A stretch of DNA of 64,000 bases, filler included, from Hyphochytrium catenoides (taxonomy: Eukaryota; Protista; Hyphochytriomycota), in the NCBI GenBank assembly GCA_900088475.1. It is 14 parts of 14 records of this genome, joined end to end, with 100 filler letters (N's around TTAATTAATTAA, not from the genome) between each part and the next. Parts side by side here need not be neighbours in the genome. Positions count along the whole stretch, not along the records: positions 9,295 to 21,125 come from FLMG01002347.1; 13 more parts are not named here. The stretch is one strand, 5' to 3'. Position numbers and translations under genes: made by a program. Positions 9,295 to 21,125 of this stretch are shown piece after piece. Position 1 is the stretch's first letter; each line of letters opens with the position of its first letter. The notes beneath the pieces were generated by a model. It was not told the DNA's origin. It ran no database searches and worked only from the letters and a program-made list of their open reading frames with translations.

Positions 9295-9675
9295 TTTGGC
9301 ACGCAAAGAACTGCCCGACACGCGGGAGAGGCGACATTTCTCTCCGCTCATATATATAGCGCATGGCGGTGCACCATGCACGGCGTCTGGCCTCTGCTCA
9401 TAGAAGAACGCATAGATCAACCTAACTTGATCTGCCACCTCCTCCCTCCTGAGGACCCTTTCCGTCATAACAGCAGCCGCACTTCTGGTAGATAATCCTT
9501 GGGCGTAAGATACACTTTCCCTGGCAAGTCGATGATTTTTGCTATCTGAATAGGGAGTGTTGCCAGCGGAAAAATCTCGAGGACCAACTTCAATTGAGGC
9601 TCCATAGTTTACCTCCCGTTGAGCTTGATACCTCACATGTGCCCTTATCGGAAGAGGCCTCTGAGTGTCAAACAT
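9295..9675 (-). CDS. Probable C-terminal tail segment of the YR-RecQ gene, truncated by the contig end
   Basis: Same strand, just downstream of the large ORF. AAAVMTERVLRREEVADQVRLIYAFFYEQR...PPCAIY aligns with GAAAREEVIRRNVTCRKLHLIQQFLFEERR...PPCAFC of ORF 42763. Confidence 0.55.
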
Positions 9676-9950
9676 GATACGTGTGCTTTGGTATAGACTT
9701 ACCGGGGGATTGGAAGGGGGTTGTCCTCTCTTATGAAGATCTGTTACCTCATCCTGTCAGAGATAGAAACCTTTAAGTATAGGGAGCTATTGGCTCTGCA
9801 GGTGCTAGTGCTAATTTGATACGAGTTATATAGCCCACCTGGTCTAGTTGTACAGCATGTCGTCGCTGTTTTGAACGGCATTCAGCCATCATTGCCTGTG
9901 CCTCTATTCGATGTTCGAAGAGTTCCTAATAGATTTCGTGAGGTAGTTGT

Positions 9951-9966
9951 CTAACCCTAACCCTAA
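9951..9966. repeat. Short interstitial telomere-type repeat (CCCTAA)~2.7
   Basis: ctaaccctaaccctaa. Confidence 0.6.
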
Positions 9967-10318
9967 TACCACCATTGTTTTTCAGACGCTGCTTAGTTGA
10001 GTCTTAAGGACTGACCTGAAAAGTAAGATTGTGCTCATTTGATCCTCGTAAGGTCCCTTCTTCCATTATATCTGCACGAGACCGCATAACCCCATCGGAA
10101 GGAGGACACTAAGGAGGTTGTGTATTGAAGAGAGTTTTTAGCACTTCCGTCACCAGGGTCATAGGGCAATATGAACGAACTTACGTTGTCACCCCCTGAT
10201 GTCCGCTCTTGCGAGCGTGCATTCATCCCATGTAGATTTTCGCCAGTATGTTGTGCTTCATGCGAGTAGATTCTACCTCGTCCATCCCTAACATTGGCCA
10301 CTAGTGAATTCAAGAGCT

Positions 10319-13300
10319 TCACAAAGCGAGTCCAGCGCTAGAAGTAGCCTTGCCTTTTCTCCATGACCATAAACTGGATTGAACAATAGTCACAAAGATG
10401 CACTCCGGGTGAGCAAAGCAGTTAACAGATATACCATCCAAGCGATCCTGGAGCTGCACACGGCGGCACCGGTCAGTGGTCAACCAGTCACAGAATTCTT
10501 CGAATATCTTAAAGCGCGATAGCTGGAGTTTGTCGTGTGACACAGCAATTTCCTCTAGTTGGGACCGTCGTTTGCTTAGCTCCTTGGCAATCAGATCGTG
10601 GCTAGAAATAATAACTGCGGTACTCAGTTTTCCGTCCCTTCCCGCTCTACCGCTCTCCTGAGCGTAGTCTAACAGCGAGTCTGAGTAGCCGAGGTGAATT
10701 ACTATCCTCACTCCCGCTATGTCGACACCCATACCCAAGGCTTTCGTTCCAGCCAGAAATTGTAGTTCGCCTTCCATCCAGCGCTTCAACTGCTTTGATT
10801 TGGTCTGCCGCTGCAGTTCTCTTTCTTCTGCAGAACTCGCTCGTGGAGAAGAATCCTCCCCGCCAGCAGGTGCAGATGAGTATGCCCGATTCTCCTCCAC
10901 AAACTTGACTTCCTCTGGGGTGATTGACGCATGATAAACAGATATTTTGATCCCCTTTGATGCACCCATTCGCCCCACTTGCTGGCAGACGGCCTTAGTA
11001 GGACAAAAGATAATGCCCCTCTCGCATCTGTTGAGCTTTCTGGACTCGGCAAGGACTCTATCAACAACTGGAGCTACAAGTAGATCCAATGGCTTTGGTG
11101 CGGGAGGTGCACCGGTCCAACCTAGATTATTATCCTCCCATATAACTTGATAAGACAGTTCTTTCCTTGAAGTCTGCCCACGGAAGACAGTGAGAGGGCT
11201 ACCAAGCCCTTGCGCAATCTCTGACTCCATACAAGCGGGCAATGTCGCTGTCAAGAGTAGGAAGGGAACCTGTACTTGCCTTAGGAGCATCAATTCACTT
11301 AAGCAAGGTCGAAAGTCAGCCCACATCCAAAGCAAATGAGCTTCTTCCAGAACAATTCTAGCCAGGTGGCCTCCTATTGCCAAGGTTTGGCAGTATCGAG
11401 CGAAGTGAGCTGAAGCAGCAACCTCCGCTGATACAAAGAGGAGGCCCACCTTTTCGTAGATGCCATCTCTCGTCCCCGGCGGAATGGTGGCGTAGTCTTT
11501 CGCAGTCAGACCCATAGCTGTCGCACGTCTTAGAAGGTCCTGCATGAGGGCGACAAGAGGTACTACGATTATGGTAAGCAGATTCCTTTCTTTGTGCTCC
11601 ACATGTACAGGCACAAAGTAGGTCATGGTCTTCCCTCCTCCTGTTGGTAGCACCGCAAGGATGTCAGCTTGACGTTTTAGGGCTGCAACACAAACCAAAC
11701 ATTGCTCTTGAGAGACGAATGAGGCATCTGGAGTTCCAAGTAGGTCTTGTAAAGCCATCAATGCCTCCGTCGTAAGCTTTTCCGAAAGAGGATCCGTAAG
11801 AATGGAGCTGTGTACAACTCCCTTACTTACACCGGACAACATGCGGTAAGCCTGGTTGCTGTCAAATCTAGCTTCCATCTGCGTAAGATATGCTCGCACG
11901 TCCGCTACAACGCTATCCAAGTAGGAAGTCGAGGGAGGGCTACCGCCACGGACGTCCGACTTATGCAAGGTGTGTATACTAGAAAGTCTGTTCCGTTGTC
12001 CCAAAGCCTGCGAATGATGAAGTACAGTGGATGGCCTTTGTGAAGTGTTTTCAAGATAAGCTTCCAACTTCTCAAATTGTAAAAAATTCCACCAAAGGGA
12101 AGAACAGAGGTGAAACCGAGCTAGGTCTTCTGAAGTAAGAGCGCGCAGGTCCATGGCGCTACGACCATATTTAATTGCCTCAGTCAGCTTTGTGTGACCG
12201 GCTTGCTCTGCGAACGGGAGAGACGGAAGGTTTGCAACCTTTGGATAGATATGGGCCTTCAGTAAAGCTACCGTGAGATGCCGATAGTCTGCTAGGGTTA
12301 GCCTTGTTTTGGTAGCTCTTCGAAACTCCCTCTGGAACACATATCTTACCTGTTGAGCAGGCATCACATGGGCACCACTTACAAACAAATACGTTAGGTA
12401 CAGGTTGGCGATACTCTTCTCTTTTTTTGGGTTGAGCTTCATGGCAAAGAGGACTTCCACAGGACGAATGATAGCCAGGTATGTCACCAGCATCATGGTG
12501 AGCTTCACAGGAAGAAATCTGGCTATGCATACGTCTCTGTGTACAAGACGAGTCACCTTATTATGCTCAACCAAGAGCATCATCCGATTACCCTGCAAGT
12601 AGTATAGTCCGCGATGTCCACCTGATAGATTTTCAGCTATACGTAAGGTCACGAGCTCGGTTCCTCTTGCCGGTTGACCACTAAGTAAATGTATCAGCAC
12701 CAGGAGTACGTCACGGAATCGGTCACAGCTCCCCATATATCCCTTCATCCAGGACCTGTTCCACATTCTCGTAGAAGTATCAGAGATAAACTGAACCTTA
12801 AATCGCTCATGGTTCATAAGAGCCATCCGAACGCTAGCCTTGGAAGGATCCGTAAGGAAAGAATATCCCCGCTGACGACACGTAAGGTCATCCCTCCAAG
12901 GTTGTTGCAAGAGCCGAGATGAATCAAGCTCTGAGACAGGAATCCCTAGCAGCAGCCTCTTCTCAAGTAAGTCCTTTGCTACTTTGAAGAGATAAGTTAC
13001 AGCAGCCCGTAACTTTTCAACTGAGATCTCCTTGCCATTGACACACAGCGTCATCAGCAAGTTATCTCCAGCCCATATAACTTGGGGGATCTTTTCTCTG
13101 CGCTTGGTGATGGCTGACGCTAGAAGCATGACATTCCGGATGGCCTGAAATGGTGTGTTTCTTCCATCCTTTATCCACTTAAGCAGGCCATAATACGCAG
13201 CGATAGATTGGGCGATGGTATCATCTTCCTCTGCCTCTGTCGTTCCGTCAGCCTGTGGCATCGCTACCACGGGAACGCCAACATTTAGGAGATCTTCTGC

Positions 13301-15805
13301 CCGTTGGGGTTCTGAACTGAAGTTCGGCCAATTAAGTTCAAGGACTACCGCGCTTCGAATAGCATACTGTAATGCTGCACATTTTGCAGTTATATCTGCT
13401 ACCTTGCCGTACTTGAGAGTTGAGTCTAGGTTGGAGTACATAATATAATTGATTACCGGAAACTGTTCCTCACGCCGCGGAGAACAAAGTGGCAGCTCTA
13501 CGAAGAATAGAGCAGTGAGCGTCTTGTGCAAAGCAAGAGACAGTTTTTTCTTCTCACTGGGACCTAGACTTGGCCAGCAACCGTCACTCCCGGCTGGTGT
13601 CATGTCAACGTTTCTCAACAGTTGAAGGAGGCTATGACACTCTTGGTTCAATTGATCTGAGAGCTGCACGTCCGAGAGTTCAGCCAGTTCTTGGTCTTCA
13701 TAGCAGCGCATGACGAAAGTGGTGAAACATGCAAGGGATAGGGCATAGCGACGCAGAGCGCCTCCTTGCACGGCTGTGAAGACAGATGGGTTGTGCCCCT
13801 CCGAACTTGGGTTTGCGATATGCTGTCGTGCTAGTAATGCGAGTGACGGGATGGCACTCTTGGCAGTGAAGAGGTATTCTTCACAGAGTACAACCAGGAG
13901 GGACAGCGGATCTGGCACTAGAGAGGGCCGGCAAGCTTCAGATATTCGACCAAAACCATTCCTGTCTATCTTTTCAAGCCATCCCAAAGTAGCTAGTAAG
14001 TTAGACATCAATCTTGTATCCTGTACTTCCTCAACCCTCAGTATGTCGCTATCCATATGCTCCAAGGTGTCTAACCACAGGCTAGCGATGGGACTGACGT
14101 CCCCTGTGTGAGGCCGTAGTAGAGAGTCCGCTGCCTCGCTCCCGTCTTCATCTATCGACCAAGGTATATGATGGGGCTCACATCGACATATGACTGGGAA
14201 GTATTTAGCATAGGGTCCTGACAACCCTAAGCGCTGCACCTTACTTTCCATGAAGGCAAACGGGAGTCCTATTGTCTGGCCGGCCTGATCCTGAAGGTTA
14301 CCAGAAGAAGTAAAGGGCTTTCCATGGCGGTGTCGTTGGTACTTGTGTTGTTTCAAGGAACTTTGCTCTCGACAGCAAAACGCCACATCCGACACACAAG
14401 CTGTACAGGAGTATCCGCTGAACACTGGCAAGCCTGTAAAGCACGGCACTGCTGCCTGCGGGGTGGAGGATTGGCTTGGGTCGGTACCTGATCGGACTCG
14501 AGTGAAAGCAGCCTCAATTGCTTCATTAGTCTCAGTCTTCTGTGGTAGTACATATAAGAGCTCCATTTCAGGCTGCCGCAAGAGGCTTTCCCGGACATCG
14601 TGATGACTGGTAAGATGTTGAGCCAGTTTATGCTGGTCGAAGAAAGCAATCCCACAATTCGTACAGCAAACGGCTCGTAAGGAGGGATTCCATATGAGTG
14701 TTAATCCCTGTATGACAAAAGTTCCAACGTGGGTTGTTGGCTGAGGTCTTTCTGCCCTTGATTCAATACGTGGCTCTTCAGCTTCTGTATCCATTTGCTG
14801 AGTGGAAGCCTGTTGTTCTTGCCCCTCCTTACTTTCGCAATCCTCTCTCCGGCATCGGCCATTCGGAGAGGGTACCGATCCTCCTGCACTGATAGCTGTG
14901 GGGCACATTGGCGATGAAGAATGTCGGAGTTGATCACACCGTCCTTGCTGAGCATGTCGCTGAAGACTGGCTGCGGACTGATAAGCCGAGGGACAGTGCA
15001 AGCAGTTGAACAGCAGAGATTGAGGATTCCGTCTCACTACAAGTGGGGACGACTGAGGATAGTTCACCGTTGTGCTCATTTGATGATTGTTTCTCACATG
15101 AGTCTTTCTCTCGCTATTGGAGGAGAATGACTCTCCGCAATGATCACACGTGATTTTTTCTCTAAAAGTCCTAGTGTCGTGAATGTTTTCATCTTGGTCT
15201 TCGGGATCTTTCTGCGAGGATGAAGAGAGATCCGATCGAGCATCAGCCCTACTGGCGCCATTGGGACCGTACTGGGATGTCCCTGAACGAGACACGGAAG
15301 GAGTGATAGCAGAAAGGGCAGGACAAGAAGGTGAACTGGCGGTAGAAGTACCGTGCGTTTGGGACTCTATGCTCTCTTCTTCTCGTCCTAAGTCCACTCC
15401 GACTCCGTGGCCACCTTCTTCTGCGTCGGGCTCAGCATTCATAAGAGGCTTTGCGCATTTTTTAGCATGGCGCTGTAGGCCTGAAGGAGTCTCATAAGAG
15501 CTGGTGCCACACCCTAAGCATGGAAAGCGTCCTGTATTAGCGTCCCTTATGACCCTTACTTCCTCGTCAGCACCCGAAAATCTAACAATCGCGGAGGGCT
15601 GATGACTGTTCCGGATATGGGTTTTCCTGGCGCTGTAAGTTGGAAACTGGGCCAAACATGAGTCACATTTATAGTATGCCGCTGTAGAAACACCAGTCGC
15701 AGCAGTTATTGTGCCAGTGGGGGCTGTCCCAGAAATAGATCCAACGGTAGCAAAGTCTGCAGCGGGTTGAGTATGCTGTAACTCTACTCTGTACTCCTCC
15801 GTCAT
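10319..15805 (-). CDS. Large intronless protein: C2H2 fingers + DUF3505/OrsD-like domain + tyrosine-recombinase-like domain + RecQ-family helicase (Tlh-like); ~1,828 aa from ATG 15805 (frame open from 16054)
   Basis: Two pairs of C2H2/C2HC fingers; WNPSLRAVCCTNC...GLPVFSGYSCTAC...HKYQRH; GQPARGTEL...HNK...YLAIIRP...YLF...DYRH...QAGH...KYG; RecQ motifs LPTGGGKT, VVPLVALMQD, VLEEAH..WADFRP, LTATLP, GIIFC, YHA, TKALGMGVD, YAQESGRAGRDG, CRR. Confidence 0.92.
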   Translation of the reverse strand: MTEEYRVELQHTQPAADFATVGSISGTAPTGTITAATGVSTAAYYKCDSCLAQFPTYSARKTHIRNSHQPSAIVRFSGADEEVRVIRDANTGRFPCLGCGTSSYETPSGLQRHAKKCAKPLMNAEPDAEEGGHGVGVDLGREEESIESQTHGTSTASSPSCPALSAITPSVSRSGTSQYGPNGASRADARSDLSSSSQKDPEDQDENIHDTRTFREKITCDHCGESFSSNSERKTHVRNNHQMSTTVNYPQSSPLVVRRNPQSLLFNCLHCPSAYQSAASLQRHAQQGRCDQLRHSSSPMCPTAISAGGSVPSPNGRCRREDCESKEGQEQQASTQQMDTEAEEPRIESRAERPQPTTHVGTFVIQGLTLIWNPSLRAVCCTNCGIAFFDQHKLAQHLTSHHDVRESLLRQPEMELLYVLPQKTETNEAIEAAFTRVRSGTDPSQSSTPQAAVPCFTGLPVFSGYSCTACVSDVAFCCREQSSLKQHKYQRHRHGKPFTSSGNLQDQAGQTIGLPFAFMESKVQRLGLSGPYAKYFPVICRCEPHHIPWSIDEDGSEAADSLLRPHTGDVSPIASLWLDTLEHMDSDILRVEEVQDTRLMSNLLATLGWLEKIDRNGFGRISEACRPSLVPDPLSLLVVLCEEYLFTAKSAIPSLALLARQHIANPSSEGHNPSVFTAVQGGALRRYALSLACFTTFVMRCYEDQELAELSDVQLSDQLNQECHSLLQLLRNVDMTPAGSDGCWPSLGPSEKKKLSLALHKTLTALFFVELPLCSPRREEQFPVINYIMYSNLDSTLKYGKVADITAKCAALQYAIRSAVVLELNWPNFSSEPQRAEDLLNVGVPVVAMPQADGTTEAEEDDTIAQSIAAYYGLLKWIKDGRNTPFQAIRNVMLLASAITKRREKIPQVIWAGDNLLMTLCVNGKEISVEKLRAAVTYLFKVAKDLLEKRLLLGIPVSELDSSRLLQQPWRDDLTCRQRGYSFLTDPSKASVRMALMNHERFKVQFISDTSTRMWNRSWMKGYMGSCDRFRDVLLVLIHLLSGQPARGTELVTLRIAENLSGGHRGLYYLQGNRMMLLVEHNKVTRLVHRDVCIARFLPVKLTMMLVTYLAIIRPVEVLFAMKLNPKKEKSIANLYLTYLFVSGAHVMPAQQVRYVFQREFRRATKTRLTLADYRHLTVALLKAHIYPKVANLPSLPFAEQAGHTKLTEAIKYGRSAMDLRALTSEDLARFHLCSSLWWNFLQFEKLEAYLENTSQRPSTVLHHSQALGQRNRLSSIHTLHKSDVRGGSPPSTSYLDSVVADVRAYLTQMEARFDSNQAYRMLSGVSKGVVHSSILTDPLSEKLTTEALMALQDLLGTPDASFVSQEQCLVCVAALKRQADILAVLPTGGGKTMTYFVPVHVEHKERNLLTIIVVPLVALMQDLLRRATAMGLTAKDYATIPPGTRDGIYEKVGLLFVSAEVAASAHFARYCQTLAIGGHLARIVLEEAHLLWMWADFRPCLSELMLLRQVQVPFLLLTATLPACMESEIAQGLGSPLTVFRGQTSRKELSYQVIWEDNNLGWTGAPPAPKPLDLLVAPVVDRVLAESRKLNRCERGIIFCPTKAVCQQVGRMGASKGIKISVYHASITPEEVKFVEENRAYSSAPAGGEDSSPRASSAEERELQRQTKSKQLKRWMEGELQFLAGTKALGMGVDIAGVRIVIHLGYSDSLLDYAQESGRAGRDGKLSTAVIISSHDLIAKELSKRRSQLEEIAVSHDKLQLSRFKIFEEFCDWLTTDRCRRVQLQDRLDGISVNCFAHPECIFVTIVQSSLWSWRKGKATSSAGLAL

Positions 15806-16285
15806 CCTTTCCAGCGAATTTGGGAGAGTGTGATGATGCCTGGAGACTCCGAAAGCAAAACAGCTGAATAGAGGAGGAGGATGATTGGGAACGCAAATGG
15901 AAGAGGAAGAACCTTCAGTGCAAAACTTATAGGTAGGAAAAATGAACAGCTGAGACAAAGAGAGTTGACTGACAGAGACACCAAGCACCGAATGGAGGAT
16001 GAAGAAACAAACGTAGTAGAGGAATGTCCCGCAGTAAAAAGCAGACTTACACACGGTGGTAGAGGCCCGGCCGGGTTCGCCGTTAGTGGTTCAGACACTG
16101 TGAAGAAAGTGTGCCGCGAACCTGCAGCAGAGGAAGAAAAGGGTAGCGCAGGAGAACTGCAGTAGAACGCAGAAAAGCCGACGCATTATGCTTTGAAGAA
16201 CCCTTGTGGTACGTGTACAAGTGGTGGGCTCTACTTGACACGAAGGCTGTTCCCCCCACCACCCGTAGTTTCCTTGGCTAATACG

Positions 16286-16407
16286 GGCAACTTCGGCTGG
16301 TGCGGCTTCCCCTGCTGCTGAGGCACGTCAGGTTCTGCTGCTGAGGCAACTTCTGCTGCTGCGGCTTCCCCTGCTGCTGAGGCACATCATGTTCTGCTGT
16401 TGAGGCA
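16286..16407. repeat. Two tandem ~59-bp units in the divergent intergenic region
   Basis: ggcaacttc(g/t)gctg(g/c)tgcggcttcccctgctgctgaggcac... starts at 16286 and again at 16345. Confidence 0.85.
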
Positions 16408-16790
16408 TTTGTAAGACCCTGTTGTCAAGCAGTCACTAATGACCGATTACTACTTGTAGAACTACAATATTGTTTTCAGAAACATCTCAAGTGCATGTAA
16501 GTTCTAGGAAGACAGATAAACAAGTCCTGAAAATTAAGTAAGTACAAGTCAAGATTGAGATAGAACTAGACAAGTCCTTCATCCTCACTCCTCCCGGTAC
16601 TTTCGCTGGATAAAATTCAGGTACAAGTACTCGCGGCACCCAACATCTGCTGTGACAATTCTGCTGGTGGTGCGGCCTGTCCTGCTGCTGCTGCGGCCAG
16701 CACGTTCCGCTGCTGAGGCAGTTGTTGCAGGAGAGCCAAACAAGAGGCAGGAGGTGGCGCGGGAGGAGAGAGAAGGTGCTGTAGTAGAGT

Positions 16791-18170
16791 ATGAGCACTG
16801 CTTCTGAACCCTACCTAAGCAAGACACCGAAAGAAGACAAAGCAGGAGCCAGTGCTGAACAGCTGAAGCGCAACCCTAGGATGACTCAGCAGCAGCAGCA
16901 GAGGAAGAAAAAGCGGCACCGCAAGCTGTGTGATGTGGAGGGTTGCACAAGAACAAGAAGATCAAAAGGAAGCAAATGCCAGCGGCATGCCAGGCAAGCT
17001 GGTATTGCATGCGTACAGTGTGAGGTTCCAGATTGCAACAAAAACGCCCGATCTAGAACGAAAAAGTGTGCGAAGCACGCAAGACTTCTGGATCGCGATT
17101 ATAGGCCACCAACTTGCAGACTTTCAGGATGCGGACGGTATCCTAGGAAGTTAGGGCGCTGTACGTTCCATCTTCGGCATCAAGATGATGATGAACAACA
17201 GCAGCATCCAGCGACTCAGGAACAAAGTCACTGTGAGCAGGAGCAACCACCGCGGCCTGCGGAGCCTCGATACGAGCATCCACCTCCAGAGCGGCGAGAA
17301 GAAAGGCCAAATCTTTTCGAGCAGGGTGAAGAAGAGCCTAGGTATCCCTCAGAGGCTCCGGCCGTGGTGGTGGGAGACGAAACCCACCAGTCTCTTCACG
17401 AGGAGCAGCGCTATCTTACTGCAAGAGATACCAAACATGATGTGGGCTGTAATACGAAGCTGACTGACAAAGAGCTGATCTCTGGCGGTGAGAGTATCCG
17501 GCCGCTAACAACTGAAGAGAGGGAATGGGTCAAGCATGCTATCTTCGACAAATCTTGGAGAAGGAACTACGAGGGCCGCACGCTGATAGCGGCAGGCTAT
17601 GCTGACTTGGATGGACTGAGCGTGTTCGTAAGATCCGAGGACCTAAAGGAGGTGAGCCGGGGGGATATTATCTCCGCAGAGGTGATCGACATGTGGATGC
17701 TCATGTTAGCTCAACGTTATCAGGACTGTAAATTTTACCGCGTACACAGGGCCCACGAGCTTCCATCTGAACTCCCTACATACATCCTAGGTCAGCGTCT
17801 CTTCATCCCCGTAGTCCTACAGTATACCAAGCCCCATCCCCACTTTGTACTGTACTACTTGGAGGATGAACAGCTATTTTTCCTCAACAGTAGTAGTAGC
17901 CTGGATAGCGAGGTTATCAAATGTGGAAGGGAGCTGTCTAGGAGGATTAAAAGAAGTGTGAGCCAAGGGGCAACAAGAGAACTGAAACCAATCAAGATGA
18001 AATGTTCGCCCCAAAGCAACAGCTATGATTGTGGTGTGCTAATCTGCCTCTTTGCCTATTACATAGCTAGCCGTATTGCCCCACCAGTGTTCTCACAACG
18101 ACACAGAGGAGATGAACACCTCATCAGAGATTGGTACTTGTATAAGATACTAAACTTCATGAATGTGTGA
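16791..18170 (+). CDS. Ulp1/SENP-like (peptidase C48) cysteine protease with three N-terminal Cys/His repeats
   Basis: CDVEGC..CQRH, CEVPDC..CAKH and CRLSGC..CTFH repeats plus a basic NLS-like RKKKRHRK. Protease: ISAEVIDMWM, LFIPV, PHF (His), FLNS (Asn at the Asp position), PQSNSYDCGVLIC (Gln/Cys). Confidence 0.88.
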   Translation: MSTASEPYLSKTPKEDKAGASAEQLKRNPRMTQQQQQRKKKRHRKLCDVEGCTRTRRSKGSKCQRHARQAGIACVQCEVPDCNKNARSRTKKCAKHARLLDRDYRPPTCRLSGCGRYPRKLGRCTFHLRHQDDDEQQQHPATQEQSHCEQEQPPRPAEPRYEHPPPERREERPNLFEQGEEEPRYPSEAPAVVVGDETHQSLHEEQRYLTARDTKHDVGCNTKLTDKELISGGESIRPLTTEEREWVKHAIFDKSWRRNYEGRTLIAAGYADLDGLSVFVRSEDLKEVSRGDIISAEVIDMWMLMLAQRYQDCKFYRVHRAHELPSELPTYILGQRLFIPVVLQYTKPHPHFVLYYLEDEQLFFLNSSSSLDSEVIKCGRELSRRIKRSVSQGATRELKPIKMKCSPQSNSYDCGVLICLFAYYIASRIAPPVFSQRHRGDEHLIRDWYLYKILNFMNV

Positions 18171-18595
18171 CTTTGTCAGTAGGACCCTCCACGAAGCTTG
18201 GTATCTTCAAAGGCTCATCATATTTCTTTGCACATCTTCCTTTCCTGCTACGACAATGGTTTGCGTCTGTTTCTCTTCCTATCATCCATATTCCATGTCG
18301 CAATATTCCTTTCTTGTTGGCGCTTCAGATTGCAAGGCACTAAACTGTATTTTTCTTAACAGCAAATTCTAGTTGCCTCTCTCGCTCTTTCTCCCTTCTC
18401 TCTCACAACCTCGTTCTTCATTTTTTTCCATTCGACATTCGACGATACCAACTAGTACTACTACTATCAGAAAGAGCAAGAGGAAGAAGGAGGAGAAGAA
18501 AGAAGAAGAAGAAGAAGGGAAAGAGGAAGAGCAAGTCTTAGTCTCTTAAACTCCTCACCCTATGCAACAGGAATAGGAGAAGGAGGAAGGGAAGG

Positions 18596-18768
18596 TAAAA
18601 ACACCAAGGGTTGGGGCCAGGATGAGGGCAGGCCATCATAACTCTCGACAAGCTAAAAACACCAAGGGTTGGGGCCAGGATGAGGGCAGGCCATCATAAC
18701 TCTCGACAAGCTAAAAACACCAACGGTTGGGGTTAGGATTAGGCAGGCCATCATAACTCCCGACAAGC
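18596..18768. repeat. Three tandem 58-bp units
   Basis: taaaaacaccaagggttggggccaggatgagggcaggccatcataactctcgacaagc at 18596 and 18654, with a diverged copy at 18712. Confidence 0.95.
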
Positions 18769-19757
18769 CAAGTAAGGGGGGAGTTCCAAACAACTACTGA
18801 AGAGGAATACGCTTCAGGACCCTAAGAGCATTTCTTCATGCATGTCCAACAAAACTCTGTAAAGAAGGCTTAGAACCATTGCCAGACGAGACCAATGACC
18901 ATGAACCAAGCCGAGAAGCATCAAGTGTAGAGCCATCGCATCGATGATTTACAAGCCGCTTCCACACAGTCAAGGACACGGGGCATAGCAACCCCCCCCC
19001 CCAAAAGACTCCATAATCTGCTGGTCGTTAGGGACACACGGTAAAATGACTGCATCCGGGCTTGTTGATGGTTCTATCTTTATCTGTAATAAAAAGTTGG
19101 GAGACATGAGCGTGGAGGTAAGTTTGCAGATTTCTTTATACGAAGCGAAAGAGAGCAGAGCAGGAACACAGAGGAACTTCCGTAAATAGAGGAAGAAGTA
19201 GGAGAACCATGTCAAAAAGAGGGAAACAGCTGAGATCTGCAGAGGAGTACGGAGATAGAGAGAGAGAAACCTTCGAGGCAAAATGATCGTTTCGGAAGGC
19301 TTTCTCCTAGGCCGGAGTCTCCGACTAGCGCAGTCTCTCCGTAATGCTCTTTTCTTTCTCCATCTTGTCTCAATCTCCACCAACCTTCTTTATTGTTATT
19401 CGTAAACTCTTTCGTGCCTCCCCTCTCGGTGAGAAATAAACGTGTGCTCCGGTCGGAGGAGTTGCATTGCTGGGAGGGTTGGAAAAGCGGTACTCTGGGG
19501 CAAACTGATGATGAGGGTAGTGTGCACGCTGTAGTTCTAGTGCTGATAGGAAGTGGGAAGAAACAAGTGAGCGAGAGAGAGCAAAGAGAGAGCAGAGGGA
19601 AAGAGACAGACAGACAGAGCGAGAAAGCACGAGAGAGGAAGAGAGAGATGGCCTTCAAGAAGAGAGAAAGCGGAAGAGAGACAGCAGCCACCACCAGTAC
19701 AATGTACGAGGTGCGTGGATTTTGATAGAGCCTGTTTTTTGACCCTGCGAGCTGACT

Positions 19758-20312
19758 GATTCCTTAGACAGAGTCCATCTCCTAAGCCTGTCATTTGTTT
19801 AGCAATCCCACACCATTGAAAGCCACATACAAAGTAAGAGATGCGGGATTCCGATTTAAGCCCTTGTATTGACGTTGCGAACTGGAGGATTCCTTAGACA
19901 GAGTCCATCTCCTAAGCCTGTCATTTGTTTAGCAATCCCACACCATTGAAAGCCACATACAAAGTAAAAGATGCGGGATTCCGATTTAAGCCCTTGTATT
20001 GACGTTGCAAACTGGAGGATTCCTTAGACAGAGTCCATCTCCTAAGCCTGTCATTTGTTTAGCAATCCCACACCATTGAAAGCCACATACAAAGTAAGAG
20101 GTGCGGGATTCCAGTTCAAGCCCTTGTATTGACCTTGCAATCTAGAGGATTCCTTAGACAGAGTCCATCTCCTAAGCCTGTCTCTTGTTTAGCAATCCCA
20201 CACCATTGAGAGCCACATTCAGAGTAAGAGGTGCGGGATTCCAATCTAAGCCCATGTATTGACCTTGCGACCCAGAGGATTCCTTAGACAGAGTCCGCCC
20301 CCTAAGCCTGTC
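19758..20312. repeat. 130-bp tandem array, ~4.3 copies
   Basis: gattccttagacagagtcc... restarts at 19758, 19888, 20018, 20148 and 20278. Confidence 0.97.
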
Positions 20313-20456
20313 TTTTGTCCTGCGATCCTGCATGGAATCCCCATACTTTCCAGGCTTTTGAGTCATTCCACCTTCCCTGGGTCGCATGGAATCCCGGGTC
20401 GCAGGCCTAATGACTGCGAAAGTGGGGTATTTACTGGTCATTCGTCTCTCGCATTA

Positions 20457-21125
20457 TTATAGGGTTGTTGGATCGTGCCGGGGGAGGCGCTCCTCCGCGG
20501 TGTGTTCAGAGCTTGTACTACTTATCTGGAAAGCTACAGGAGATCGAGGCTGCCTGATGCTTTGGCCACTAGTCAAGGTTGCAAGACCAGCCTGAATTTT
20601 GTCTCTCCGCTCTCTCCTATCAGCCTCGTCCACCAGTGTGGACATGAGGGACGCTGGAGTTTGAACAGTTCTATCAGGAACGCACTTCATCGCCAGGATA
20701 AAGCTGTCATAGCTCTTCGGCAAGCTGTTGAAGAGTCTCAAGACAAAGTCACCGGCTCCCACCGCATACGGTGTCTCATCTAGGTTGTTCCTTAGATCCA
20801 TCAAGTCTCCCAATTGTCTTTTGACAGATCCTCCTTCTGCTAACTTGGAGATTCAGGAATCTCATCTTCAAGACTTCTGGGTCGTCATTCCCGTTGTTCT
20901 GGTAGACTTCCTGTAAGGCCTGCCATGCTTTTCCAGGGGTGCTCATCCCTTTCACGTACACTCTCTGTGCCTTCTCAATGGTCATGTATATGTAGGCATA
21001 AGCTCATTCTGCAGCTTCCTCTGTCTTGGGATCATATGAGTAGGATTCTTTCTTGTCCAGCGGTATCAGCTTTAGACCTTCCAACAGTTCTCCTTCCGGA
21101 GGACGTGCTCCATCTCATATGCCCA
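20457..21125 (-). pseudogene. Ty1/Copia gag (UBN2-type) remnant, frameshifted
   Basis: TPGKAWQALQEVY...LKMRFLNL and VLRLFNSLPKSYDSFI...L.DEADRR in overlapping frames. Confidence 0.8.

What the first reader, a model, noticed from the sequence alone, without database searches (positions are those of the whole stretch)
12160..12700. Cryptic tyrosine-recombinase catalytic set inside the RecQ-like protein
Seen, in lambda-integrase order: GQPARGTELVTL (Arg, codon 12667-12665), HNK (Lys), RFLP...VTYLAIIRP, YLF, LADYRH (HxxR position, first His replaced), EQAGH (LGH box) and KYG (Tyr, codon 12169-12167, nine residues after the His). Known: R-K-HxxR-H/W-Y is the YR active site. Inference: the domain is catalytically plausible and would be missed by an annotation calling the gene simply 'RecQ helicase'.
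Basis: partly seen in the sequence, partly recalled or inferred. Interest (0 to 1): 0.85.

Follow-up and report, generated by a model that had tools for sequence, protein, structure and literature searches.

The report
Tyrosine-recombinase domain in telomere-linked helicase
The unexplained "TLH domain" in front of the RecQ helicase in this fungal-type telomere-linked helicase gene is a tyrosine-recombinase (DNA cutting and rejoining) domain with an almost complete, strongly conserved active site, which suggests these chromosome-end genes cut and rejoin DNA as well as unwind it.

Summary
One intact ORF (minus strand, 10319-15805, 1828 aa) encodes C2H2/OrsD zinc fingers, a roughly 370-aa domain with no Pfam or PDB sequence match, and a RecQ-type helicase.

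This is the published architecture of telomere-linked helicases (TLH), whose "TLH domain" has had no assigned function.

- **Conservation:** the middle domain has over 2000 relatives. R1047, K1083, R1175, H1204 and Y1213 are all present in 145 of 149 diverged family members. The Tyr is present in 150 of 150.
- **Fold:** the AlphaFold model (pLDDT 90) matches only tyrosine recombinases and their kin. Xer scores Z 12, Cre 10.6, topoisomerase IB 9.4. Ranks 1-31 of an exhaustive PDB scan all belong to this superfamily.
- **Residue equivalence:** a profile-profile alignment to XerD places the five residues on XerD R148, K172, R247, H270 and Y279. It is dispensable in Cre and absent in topoisomerase IB.
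- **Relatives:** the closest Swiss-Prot folds are S. pombe Tlh1/Tlh2 and S. cerevisiae Y'-Help1.

No paper I could search links TLH to recombinases, although at least one family member already carries an automatic UniProt name, "Tyr recombinase domain-containing protein". Catalysis and biological role remain untested.

The parts
10319..15805 (-). Whole gene: intact 1828-aa ORF counted from Met at 15805. The frame is open upstream to 16054 and the stop is at 10319-10321. It is a telomere-linked-helicase (TLH) family protein.
   Evidence: The architecture of C2H2, TLH domain and RecQ matches the published TLH description. The best Swiss-Prot fold match is S. pombe Tlh1.
15083..15670 (-). N-terminal C2H2 zinc fingers (residues 46-68 and 219-241).
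   Evidence: Pfam zf-C2H2, E 1e-8 on the N-terminal piece.
14330..14698 (-). OrsD-like zinc-finger region (residues 370-492).
   Evidence: Pfam PF12013, 31 bits against a cut-off of 26.6. Several relatives carry the same family.
13181..14008 (-). All-helical region upstream of the catalytic domain (about residues 600-875). It may correspond to a recombinase core-binding domain, but this is unresolved.
   Evidence: Second AlphaFold model, pLDDT mostly 75-95 and helical. Fold search gave no separate match for it.
12074..13180 (-). The 'TLH domain' (residues 876-1244): a tyrosine-recombinase-type catalytic domain with large insertions.
   Evidence: Family HMM envelope. AlphaFold pLDDT 90.3, pTM 0.89. 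Fold matches are all YR/topoisomerase IB. hhalign to XerD gives pairwise E 1.1e-3.
12656..12667 (-). Box I, A-R-G-T-E. Arg1047 (Arg I, 12665-12667) and Glu1050 (12656-12658, the position of Cre Glu176).
   Evidence: Arg 173/175 and Glu 172/175 in the family. Arg1047 aligns to XerD R148.
12611..12613 (-). Arg1065, an additional family-invariant arginine with no assigned role.
   Evidence: 174/175 in the family.
12557..12559 (-). Lys1083, the beta-hairpin catalytic lysine.
   Evidence: 174/175 in the family. Aligns to XerD K172. Lies in the strand-turn-strand segment of the model.
12281..12292 (-). A-D-Y-R. Arg1175 (Arg II, 12281-12283), with Ala1172 at the His II position.
   Evidence: Arg 155/155 in the family. 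The R-3 position varies among S, A, N, R and Q. Arg1175 aligns to XerD R247 and Ala1172 to XerD H244.
12167..12196 (-). G-H-x8-Y. His1204 (His III, 12194-12196) and Tyr1213 (the presumed nucleophile, 12167-12169).
   Evidence: His 149/151 and Tyr 150/150 in the family. They align to XerD H270 and Y279 with the same 9-residue spacing.
10631..11692 (-). RecQ-type superfamily-2 helicase core (residues 1372-1725). Walker A Lys1392, motif II EEAH at 1487-1490, motif VI QESGRAGRDG at 1716.
   Evidence: Pfam DEAD 53.9 bits and Helicase_C 53 bits.

Best explanation
The gene is a member of the telomere-linked helicase (TLH) family. This is the family of S. pombe Tlh1/2 and, at the fold level, S. cerevisiae Y'-Help1.

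Its 'TLH domain', conserved but of unknown function in the literature, is a tyrosine-recombinase-type DNA breaking-and-rejoining domain of the XerC/D-Cre-integrase lineage. Its active site is Arg1047, Glu1050, Lys1083, Arg1175, His1204 and Tyr1213. It lacks only the dispensable His II.

I infer that it is catalytically active. Tyr1213 would attack a DNA phosphodiester, form a covalent 3'-phosphotyrosine link and leave a 5'-OH. The strand would then be resealed or exchanged.

The RecQ helicase fused to it translocates 3'->5'. It would unwind or branch-migrate the DNA that the recombinase domain holds. The N-terminal zinc fingers would supply target binding.

The most likely biological outcome is recombination or strand transfer at subtelomeric DNA, which copies or moves TLH-containing blocks between chromosome ends.

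**Shown here:** fold, homology, residue equivalence, conservation, the fixed order of recombinase domain then helicase, and telomere linkage of relatives.

**Inferred:** catalysis, substrate, coupling to the helicase and the biological role.
For: - **Size of the family:** 2157 relatives at E<1e-3 in 1.84 billion representative proteins.
- **Conservation:** R, E, K, R and Y are invariant in a 71-sequence alignment. R-K-R-H-Y is present in 145 of 149 diverged domains. Metagenomic loci give the same picture. All named fungal members checked carry the pentad, apart from one partial Coemansia protein (P0304) that has Arg at the Lys position and does not reach the His and Tyr positions.
- **Fold:** AlphaFold pLDDT 90.3. 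Foldseek's top 50 PDB hits are all tyrosine recombinases. VIA-align gives Z 12.0 to Xer, 11.2 to XerH and 10.6 to Cre, then drops to 3.5 for unrelated folds. In an exhaustive scan of 48,161 chains, ranks 1-31 all belong to the YR/topoisomerase IB/protelomerase superfamily.
- **Residue equivalence:** hhalign against an 80-sequence XerD profile gives pairwise E 1.1e-3. All five residues fall on XerD R148, K172, R247, H270 and Y279.
- **The missing His II:** it is not required for Cre activity and is absent in topoisomerase IB. Glu176 is specific to recombinases (PMC2943603).
- **Fusion to the helicase:** 61 of 66 family proteins of at least 1000 aa carry the helicase. The order is always recombinase domain then helicase, 80 of 80. 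The helicase motifs are intact.
- **TLH membership:** Tlh1 E 3e-16 and Y'-Help1 E 1e-8 by fold. The architecture matches the published one.
- **Telomere linkage of relatives:**
Against: - No biochemical evidence exists for any family member.
- The window's domain gets no Pfam hit. Only 1 of 71 members touches PF00589, at E 2.4e-4.
- The hhalign probability is low (20%), although the pairwise E-value is 1e-3.
- His II is absent.
- A canonical N-terminal core-binding domain was not identified.
- I could not retrieve the Tlh1/2 and Y'-Help1 sequences, so whether those proteins carry the pentad is untested.
- This copy is not shown to lie at a telomere. It has only (CCCTAA)2, 355 nt downstream of the stop. 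No RNA run was listed for it.
- Its Walker B motif reads EEAH rather than DEAH.
Confidence: 0.7

Rival explanations
1. The domain works as a topoisomerase-IB-like swivel, not a recombinase. It nicks, lets the DNA rotate and reseals the same strand. This would relieve the torsional stress made by the fused RecQ helicase. It would be a single-polypeptide analogue of RecQ-Top3 pairs or reverse gyrase.
For: The active site lacks His II and always has His at position III, as in topoisomerase IB (PMC2943603). Topoisomerase IB structures match at Z 9.4, 9.1 and 8.1. The domain is always fused upstream of a helicase. Bacterial RecQ-topoisomerase IA fusions exist (P0302 and P0303).
Against: The best structural matches are Xer, Cre and integrases, not topoisomerases (Z 12 against 9.4). 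The recombinase-specific Glu at R+3 is conserved in 172 of 175 members, and topoisomerase IB has no equivalent. The box I and box II sequence motifs and the H-x8-Y spacing align to XerD.
Confidence: 0.17
2. The domain is a catalytically inert recombinase fold kept only for DNA binding or protein scaffolding. Precedents are Ndc10, the Crypton-derived DUF3504 proteins and the phage repressors SroF and MrpR.
For: Such domesticated folds are known, and they appear among the structural matches: Ndc10 Z 6.5, QRICH1 Z 5.4, SroF Z 7.4, MrpR Z 5.8. No activity has been measured for any TLH protein.
Against: The nucleophile Tyr, both Arg, the Lys, the His and the organising Glu are kept in about 97-100% of members that share only 25-30% identity. 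That pattern is expected for catalysis, not for binding alone.
Confidence: 0.1
3. The motifs are a chance resemblance inside a helical linker of a RecQ helicase.
For: Single residues spaced over 170 aa are easy to find in any long protein. The window's segment has no Pfam or PDB sequence hit.
Against: Fold, profile alignment and family-wide invariance all point the same way.
Confidence: 0.01

Closest known systems
Telomere-linked helicases (TLH): S. pombe Tlh1/Tlh2, Magnaporthe TLH1, Fusarium TLHs, Ustilago and Monosiga homologues
   Same: Same architecture of C2H2 fingers, 'TLH domain' and RecQ helicase. Tlh1 and Tlh2 are the best Swiss-Prot fold matches to the middle domain (E 3e-16, TM 0.71). 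A Mycena relative is named tlh1 by NCBI. Relatives lie near contig ends or telomere repeats.
   Different: The window protein is only about 20-30% identical to any relative found. This copy is not shown to be telomere-adjacent. It lacks the Cys-rich C-terminal tail of most relatives. The TLH literature treats the TLH domain as of unknown function.
S. cerevisiae Y' element helicase Y'-Help1 (YRF1 family)
   Same: The region in front of its helicase (about residues 347-734) has the same fold as the window's domain (E 1e-8, TM 0.64). It is also a subtelomeric, multi-copy helicase.
   Different: Identity is only about 15%. I could not test whether Y'-Help1 keeps the catalytic residues.
XerC/XerD, archaeal XerA, XerH, Cre and phage integrases (tyrosine recombinases, Pfam PF00589)
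   Same: Catalytic-domain fold at Z 10-12. Arg I, Glu, Lys, Arg II, His III and Tyr are in equivalent positions, with the same His-to-Tyr spacing.
   Different: His II is absent. The domain is about twice as long because of insertions. It gives no significant PF00589 score. It is fused to a helicase and zinc fingers in a protein of about 1800 aa. It is eukaryotic.
Eukaryotic recombinase-encoding mobile elements: Crypton, DIRS/Ngaro, Starship captains (DUF3435)
   Same: They use the same enzyme superfamily in fungi. They are multi-copy and associated with repeats.
   Different: There is no DUF3435 or DUF3504 Pfam match. None of those elements is described with a fused RecQ helicase. Neither the Crypton survey nor a 2026 paper on Crypton elements in fungi mentions a helicase or TLH. 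No element boundaries were defined here.
Helitron RepHel (an analogy of mechanism, not homology)
   Same: A single polypeptide with zinc fingers, a tyrosine-based DNA-nicking domain and a helicase, encoded by a multi-copy element.
   Different: Helitrons use an HUH nuclease (5'-phosphotyrosine) with a 5'->3' Pif1 helicase. Here it is a recombinase/topoisomerase IB-type domain (3'-phosphotyrosine) with a 3'->5' RecQ helicase. That is the mirror-image polarity. This comparison is my inference.
Type IB topoisomerases
   Same: Shared fold (Z 8-9.4), and an R-K-R-H-Y pentad without His II.
   Different: The window's family keeps the recombinase-specific Glu and the XerD-like box motifs. Xer recombinases match better.

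Membership tests
Tyrosine recombinase superfamily | Catalytic-domain fold | tested here: met
   pLDDT 90 model. Z 12.0 to Xer (4a8e), 11.2 to XerH, 10.6 to Cre. Ranks 1-31 of 48,161 PDB chains all belong to this superfamily.
Tyrosine recombinase superfamily | Arg I in box I, with Glu/Asp three residues later | tested here: met
   R1047 is present in 173/175 and E1050 in 172/175. R1047 aligns to XerD R148.
Tyrosine recombinase superfamily | Catalytic Lys in the beta2-beta3 hairpin | tested here: met
   K1083 is present in 174/175. It aligns to XerD K172.
Tyrosine recombinase superfamily | His II of the HxxR motif | tested here: not met
   The position is Ala1172 in the window and varies among S, A, N, R and Q in the family. 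In recombinases His II is about 87% conserved and is dispensable in Cre (PMC2943603).
Tyrosine recombinase superfamily | Arg II | tested here: met
   R1175 is present in 155/155. It aligns to XerD R247.
Tyrosine recombinase superfamily | His/Trp III and the Tyr nucleophile | tested here: met
   H1204 is present in 149/151 and Y1213 in 150/150. They align to XerD H270 and Y279 with the same 9-residue spacing.
Tyrosine recombinase superfamily | Match to Pfam Phage_integrase (PF00589) | tested here: not met
   No hit for the window's domain at E up to 10. One of 71 family members hits at E 2.4e-4.
Tyrosine recombinase superfamily | N-terminal core-binding domain that forms a clamp with the catalytic domain | tested here: inconclusive
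   A confident helical region precedes the domain. Fold search gave no separate match for it.
Tyrosine recombinase superfamily | Covalent 3'-phosphotyrosine intermediate and strand exchange | not testable with these tools
   This needs biochemistry.
Telomere-linked helicase (TLH) family | C2H2 fingers, TLH domain and RecQ helicase, in that order | tested here: met
   The order of TLH domain then helicase holds in 80/80.
Telomere-linked helicase (TLH) family | Homology of the middle domain to that of Tlh1/Tlh2 | tested here: met
   Foldseek against Swiss-Prot models gives Tlh1 E 3.1e-16 and Tlh2 E 2.1e-15. The test was by fold only, because the sequences were not retrievable.
Telomere-linked helicase (TLH) family | Location next to telomere repeats, and several copies in the genome | tested here: inconclusive
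   Only (CCCTAA)2 at 9955-9966, with a chance expectation of 0.1. Contig depth doubles from 10999 upward and a diverged paralogous contig exists. The piece is only 11.8 kb.
RecQ helicase family | DEAD and Helicase_C domains, with Walker A, motif II and motif VI | tested here: met
   Pfam 53.9 and 53 bits. K1392, EEAH at 1487-1490 and QESGRAGRDG at 1716.
RecQ helicase family | RQC and HRDC domains | tested here: not met
   Pfam finds neither in the window protein.
Starship captain (DUF3435) and Crypton-derived DUF3504 | Match to the Pfam family model | tested here: not met
   No such hit for the window or for 71 family members.
Type IB topoisomerase | R-K-R-H-Y pentad with no Glu and no His II equivalent; the best fold match is to topoisomerases | tested here: not met
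   The pentad is present and His II is absent. However, the recombinase-specific Glu is conserved, and Xer and Cre score above topoisomerase IB.

The most novel reading that the evidence does not exclude
TLH genes, and by extension the yeast Y' elements, may not be host telomere helpers. They could be the core of an unrecognised class of self-mobilising DNA elements that colonise chromosome ends.

Such an element would be driven by one polypeptide joining a tyrosine recombinase (3'-phosphotyrosine) to a 3'->5' RecQ helicase. That makes it a mirror image of the Helitron RepHel protein.

On this reading, the amplification of Y'/TLH blocks in telomerase-deficient survivors would be catalysed at least partly by the element's own enzyme. 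It would not depend only on host homologous recombination.
Probability: 0.3. Interest if true: 0.9.

Novelty: new variant of a known kind. Interest (0 to 1): 0.8.

Why it matters
Telomere-linked helicases and yeast Y' elements have been known for decades. They amplify when telomerase fails. It has long been suggested that they descend from mobile DNA, but no DNA-cutting or DNA-joining activity has ever been assigned to them.

The TLH papers I could read describe the conserved "TLH domain" (the label dates to 2009) as having no known function. These include a 2024 preprint and a November 2025 Mobile DNA paper.

This work shows that the domain is a tyrosine-recombinase catalytic domain with a conserved active site. 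That gives a concrete, testable enzymatic hypothesis for how these elements spread between chromosome ends.

It also adds a large new eukaryotic recombinase family fused to a helicase. More than 2000 clusters at 50% identity were found, in Basidiomycota, Ascomycota including Saccharomycotina, and Ustilaginomycotina. Genome annotation currently labels these proteins 'helicase' or 'hypothetical protein'.

Tried and rejected
**Searches that found nothing or too little**
- Direct sequence searches of the domain against Pfam and PDB, with single sequence or family HMM, found nothing useful. One weak PF00589 hit appeared among 71 members.
- hhalign of the family profile against single XerD or Cre sequences was not significant. 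A three-sequence alignment of XerD, lambda Int and Cre was too poor to use.
- A homologue search with XerD returned only sequences about 90% identical, which are useless for a profile. An 80-species XerD set from genome contigs replaced it.
- The third homologue search, with a profile of TLH domain plus helicase, was swamped by ordinary RecQ helicases. It did not return S. pombe Tlh or yeast Y'-Help1 sequences, so their catalytic residues could not be checked.

**Context and expression**
- Telomere-repeat searches gave only (CCCTAA)2 in the window. None were found in the first 87 loci.
- No RNA run was listed, so expression is unknown.

**Structure**
- The larger structural model did not resolve a core-binding domain.

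**Readings rejected**
- DUF3435 or DUF3504 membership: no Pfam match.
- A protelomerase-like reading: TelK scores only Z 5.4-5.7.
- Chance motif.
Full report
**The observation**

The piece 9295-21125 holds one long minus-strand ORF, 10319-16054. Counted from the first Met at 15805, it encodes 1828 residues.

- GQPARGTELVTL, with Arg1047 at 12667-12665
- VEHNK, with Lys1083
- IARFLP, IIRP and YLF
- LADYRH, with Arg1175 and Ala at the His II position
- EQAGH, with His1204
- KYG, with Tyr1213 at 12169-12167, nine residues after the His

Pfam finds C2H2 fingers (residues 46-68 and 219-241), an OrsD-type zinc-finger region (370-492), and DEAD plus Helicase_C domains (1372-1523 and 1664-1725). It finds nothing between about 500 and 1370. 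A PDB sequence search of the middle region is empty.

**The middle domain is a large conserved family**

A phmmer search of residues 736-1285 against 1.84 billion cluster representatives gave 2157 hits at E<1e-3 and 742 at E<1e-10. All hits cover query positions of about 140-510, which are protein residues 875-1245.

An 11-sequence full-length alignment already had R1047, K1083, R1175, H1204 and Y1213 among its few invariant columns. In a 71-sequence domain alignment, R1047, E1050, K1083, R1175 and Y1213 are invariant, and H1204 is at least 90% conserved.

I built a family HMM and ran it over all proteins fetched. Counts at each position:

| Position | Present in family |
|---|---|
| Arg I | 173/175 |
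| Glu (R+3) | 172/175 |
| Lys | 174/175 |
| Arg II | 155/155 |
| His III | 149/151 |
| Tyr | 150/150 |

The full pentad R-K-R-H-Y is present in 145 of 149 domains. The His II position (R-3) varies among S, A, N, R and Q.

An independent sample came from a degenerate DNA pattern for GQPARGTEL in metagenome contigs. Of the 80 loci returned, 49 hold a true domain. They give Lys 49/49, Arg II 41/42, His 38/39 and Tyr 38/38.

Named members carry the same set. They are from Mycena, Suillus, Pseudogymnoascus, Blastobotrys, Tilletia, Arthromyces, Ceratobasidium, Flammula and Phlebia.

**The fold**

AlphaFold2 on the 71-sequence alignment gave pLDDT 90.3 and pTM 0.89.

- Foldseek against PDB returned tyrosine recombinases in all top 50 places: XerA, lambda Int, Cre, XerH and the Tn1549 integrase. 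Probabilities reach 0.99.
- VIA-align gave Z 12.0 to an archaeal Xer, 11.2 to XerH, 10.6 to Cre, 9.4 to a bacterial topoisomerase IB and 5.4 to TelK. The next, unrelated fold scores 3.5.
- A Foldseek-independent scan of 48,161 PDB chains put members of the recombinase/topoisomerase IB/protelomerase superfamily at ranks 1-31. These include Flp, the SSV1 integrase, Ndc10 and the Crypton-derived QRICH1.
- The protein-language-model atlas places the domain among unnamed Basidiomycota and Ascomycota clusters. XerC-type integrases are the nearest named structures.

**Residue equivalence**

I took E. coli XerD from the K-12 record and 79 XerD homologues from other species, and built a profile. hhalign of the TLH family profile against it gave a 133-column alignment with pairwise E 1.1e-3.

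| Window residue | XerD residue |
|---|---|
| R1047 | R148 |
| K1083 | K172 |
| A1172 | H244 |
| R1175 | R247 |
| H1204 | H270 |
| Y1213 | Y279 |

Gibb et al. report on the Cre active site (PMC2943603). Cre His289 (His II) is specific to recombinases, about 87% conserved and not required for recombination. Glu176 is also specific to recombinases and is absent from topoisomerase IB.

The TLH family therefore has a hybrid active site. It keeps the recombinase-type Glu but lacks His II, as topoisomerases do.

**What the gene is**

Against Swiss-Prot AlphaFold models, the best matches are:
- S. pombe Tlh1 (residues 649-1072, E 3e-16, TM 0.71) and Tlh2
- eight copies of S. cerevisiae Y'-Help1 (about residues 347-734, E 1e-8)
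- then bacterial XerC and XerD

A 2024 preprint on Fusarium TLH genes describes TLH proteins as C2H2 motifs, a roughly 250-aa 'TLH domain' upstream of the helicase, and RecQ motifs. The 'TLH domain' label comes from Rehmeyer 2009. The preprint gives the function as undetermined. That is exactly the window's architecture.

In the proteins fetched, 61 of 66 that are at least 1000 aa long and carry the domain also carry the helicase. The order is always domain then helicase, 80 of 80. The helicase motifs are intact. The one departure is Glu for Asp in Walker B, which 5 of 29 relatives share.

**Telomere linkage**

- The Mycena 'tlh1' gene lies 57 kb from the end of a 6.27-Mb contig.
- The Suillus gene lies 16-23 kb from a contig end.
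- The Blastobotrys member is ARAD1D00132p. The low locus number suggests the start of chromosome D (my reading of the locus tag).
- Two metagenomic loci end in true telomere arrays. L120 has (TTAGGG)13 about 7.5 kb downstream of a fragmented TLH gene. L131 has (CCCTAA)11 capping a truncated TLH domain. In both, the gene points to the telomere.

The window itself has only (CCCTAA)2 at 9955-9966. This lies 355 nt downstream of the stop codon, in the same relative orientation. It is expected by chance 0.1 times per window, so it is weak evidence.

Contigs of three DNA runs of the same organism confirm the sequence. They show depth doubling from 10999 upward, and a diverged paralogous contig. This hints at two or more copies. 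Contig depth is not a copy number.

**Mechanism**

The following are shown: fold, homology, catalytic-residue equivalence, strong purifying selection on those residues, and obligatory fusion to a RecQ helicase.

The following are inferred. Tyr1213 makes a 3'-phosphotyrosine intermediate. The 3'->5' helicase works on the strand or junction that the recombinase domain holds. The zinc fingers target the protein.

I rate an active cutting-and-rejoining enzyme at about 0.85. This splits into recombinase-like strand transfer (about 0.7) and a pure topoisomerase-like swivel (about 0.17). An inert binding module gets about 0.1.

The more daring reading is that TLH and Y' blocks are self-mobilising recombinase-helicase elements, a mirror image of Helitron RepHel. 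I put this at about 0.3.

**Novelty**

Six literature searches combined TLH, tlh1, YRF1 and subtelomeric helicase terms with tyrosine recombinase, Crypton, integrase and topoisomerase IB terms. None found a paper holding both kinds of term in a relevant way.

- The Crypton survey and a 2026 paper on fungal Cryptons mention no helicase or TLH.
- A November 2025 Mobile DNA paper still calls TLHs host helicases with a possible role in telomere maintenance.
- One UniProt entry in the family is automatically named 'Tyr recombinase domain-containing protein'. So the signal is detectable by existing profiles in some members and may be recorded in domain databases.

The searchable library omits most subscription journals. 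An existing description therefore cannot be excluded.

**Limits**

- I could not fetch the Tlh1/2 or Y'-Help1 sequences, so the pentad in those classic proteins is untested.
- The tools return no model coordinates, so 3D clustering rests on equivalence to solved recombinases.
- A core-binding domain was not resolved.
- No expression data were obtained.
- The organism is coded in the run tables and stays unidentified. Relatives indicate a fungus, probably a basidiomycete.

Noticed in passing
window 16791-18170 (+): A divergently oriented 459-aa ORF lies next to the TLH gene. Its N-terminus has repeated Cys-rich CxxC...H motifs (weak Zf_WRKY19 hit). Its C-terminus gives faint Ulp1/SUMO-protease (Peptidase_C48) signals: Pfam E 0.036, and atlas neighbours mostly C48 at score 0.80. 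Whether it belongs to the same element is unknown.
   Followed up: partly
window 9955-9966: A two-unit telomere-type repeat, (CCCTAA)2, lies 355 nt downstream of the TLH stop codon. Its orientation is the one a left-end telomere would have relative to the gene. Two metagenomic relatives that end in real telomere arrays (L120, L131) have the same gene-to-telomere orientation. Chance expectation is 0.1 per window.
   Followed up: partly
window 10999-16150 against 10200-10999: In contigs of three DNA runs of the same organism, the assembler's depth doubles from 10999 upward (19.6 to 36, and 217 to 432). An alternative sequence joins at 10999. This suggests a second copy that diverges inside the helicase's 3' part. 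A further diverged contig touches only 12236-12259 and 13127-13159.
   Followed up: partly
window 10319-10420 (C-terminus of the ORF): The protein stops shortly after the RecQ zinc-binding CRR...C motif. It lacks the CDxC motif and the long Cys/His-rich tail present in most relatives (consensus of A4). This copy may be C-terminally truncated or rearranged.
   Followed up: no
window 11344-11355 (residues 1487-1490): The helicase Walker B motif reads EEAH instead of DEAH. The same Asp-to-Glu change occurs in 5 of 29 aligned relatives.
   Followed up: partly
window 20460-20813 (-): A fragment of a Copia-type LTR-retrotransposon gag (Pfam Retrotran_gag_2, E 3e-5, below the curated cut-off). The neighbourhood is rich in repeats.
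   Followed up: partly
window 18592-18768 and 19758-20318: Two tandem arrays: a 58-bp unit x3.1 (94% matches) and a 130-bp unit x4.3 (93% matches). There is also an (AAG)13 microsatellite at 18478-18517.
   Followed up: no
window 16286-16407: A CTG-rich 59-bp unit repeated 2.1 times lies in the region upstream of the TLH start codon, between the two divergent ORFs.
   Followed up: no
L131 1-840 and L120 5987-14442: L131 has (CCCTAA)11 at the contig end, about 50 nt beyond a TLH domain that is cut off at HMM position 316. It looks like a chromosome break healed by telomere addition inside a TLH gene. L120 has a TLH gene broken into short ORFs about 7.5 kb from a (TTAGGG)13 contig end.
   Followed up: partly
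P0302, P0303: Proteins of about 1500 aa that combine RecQ helicase domains with a type IA topoisomerase (Pfam Topoisom_bac and Toprim). They are a helicase-topoisomerase fusion that parallels the arrangement proposed here.
   Followed up: no
P0014, P0163: Two family members are deposited as 'MAG: helicase-related protein' of a bacterium and of a Gloeomargaritales cyanobacterium. The family is otherwise fungal, so these are probably eukaryotic contigs binned into bacterial MAGs.
   Followed up: no
L086 1-484 and 2974-4939: The contig holding relative P0010 carries a second OrsD-containing gene of 1532 aa at its edge. It also carries fungal NACHT/HeLo (NLR-type) genes nearby.
   Followed up: no
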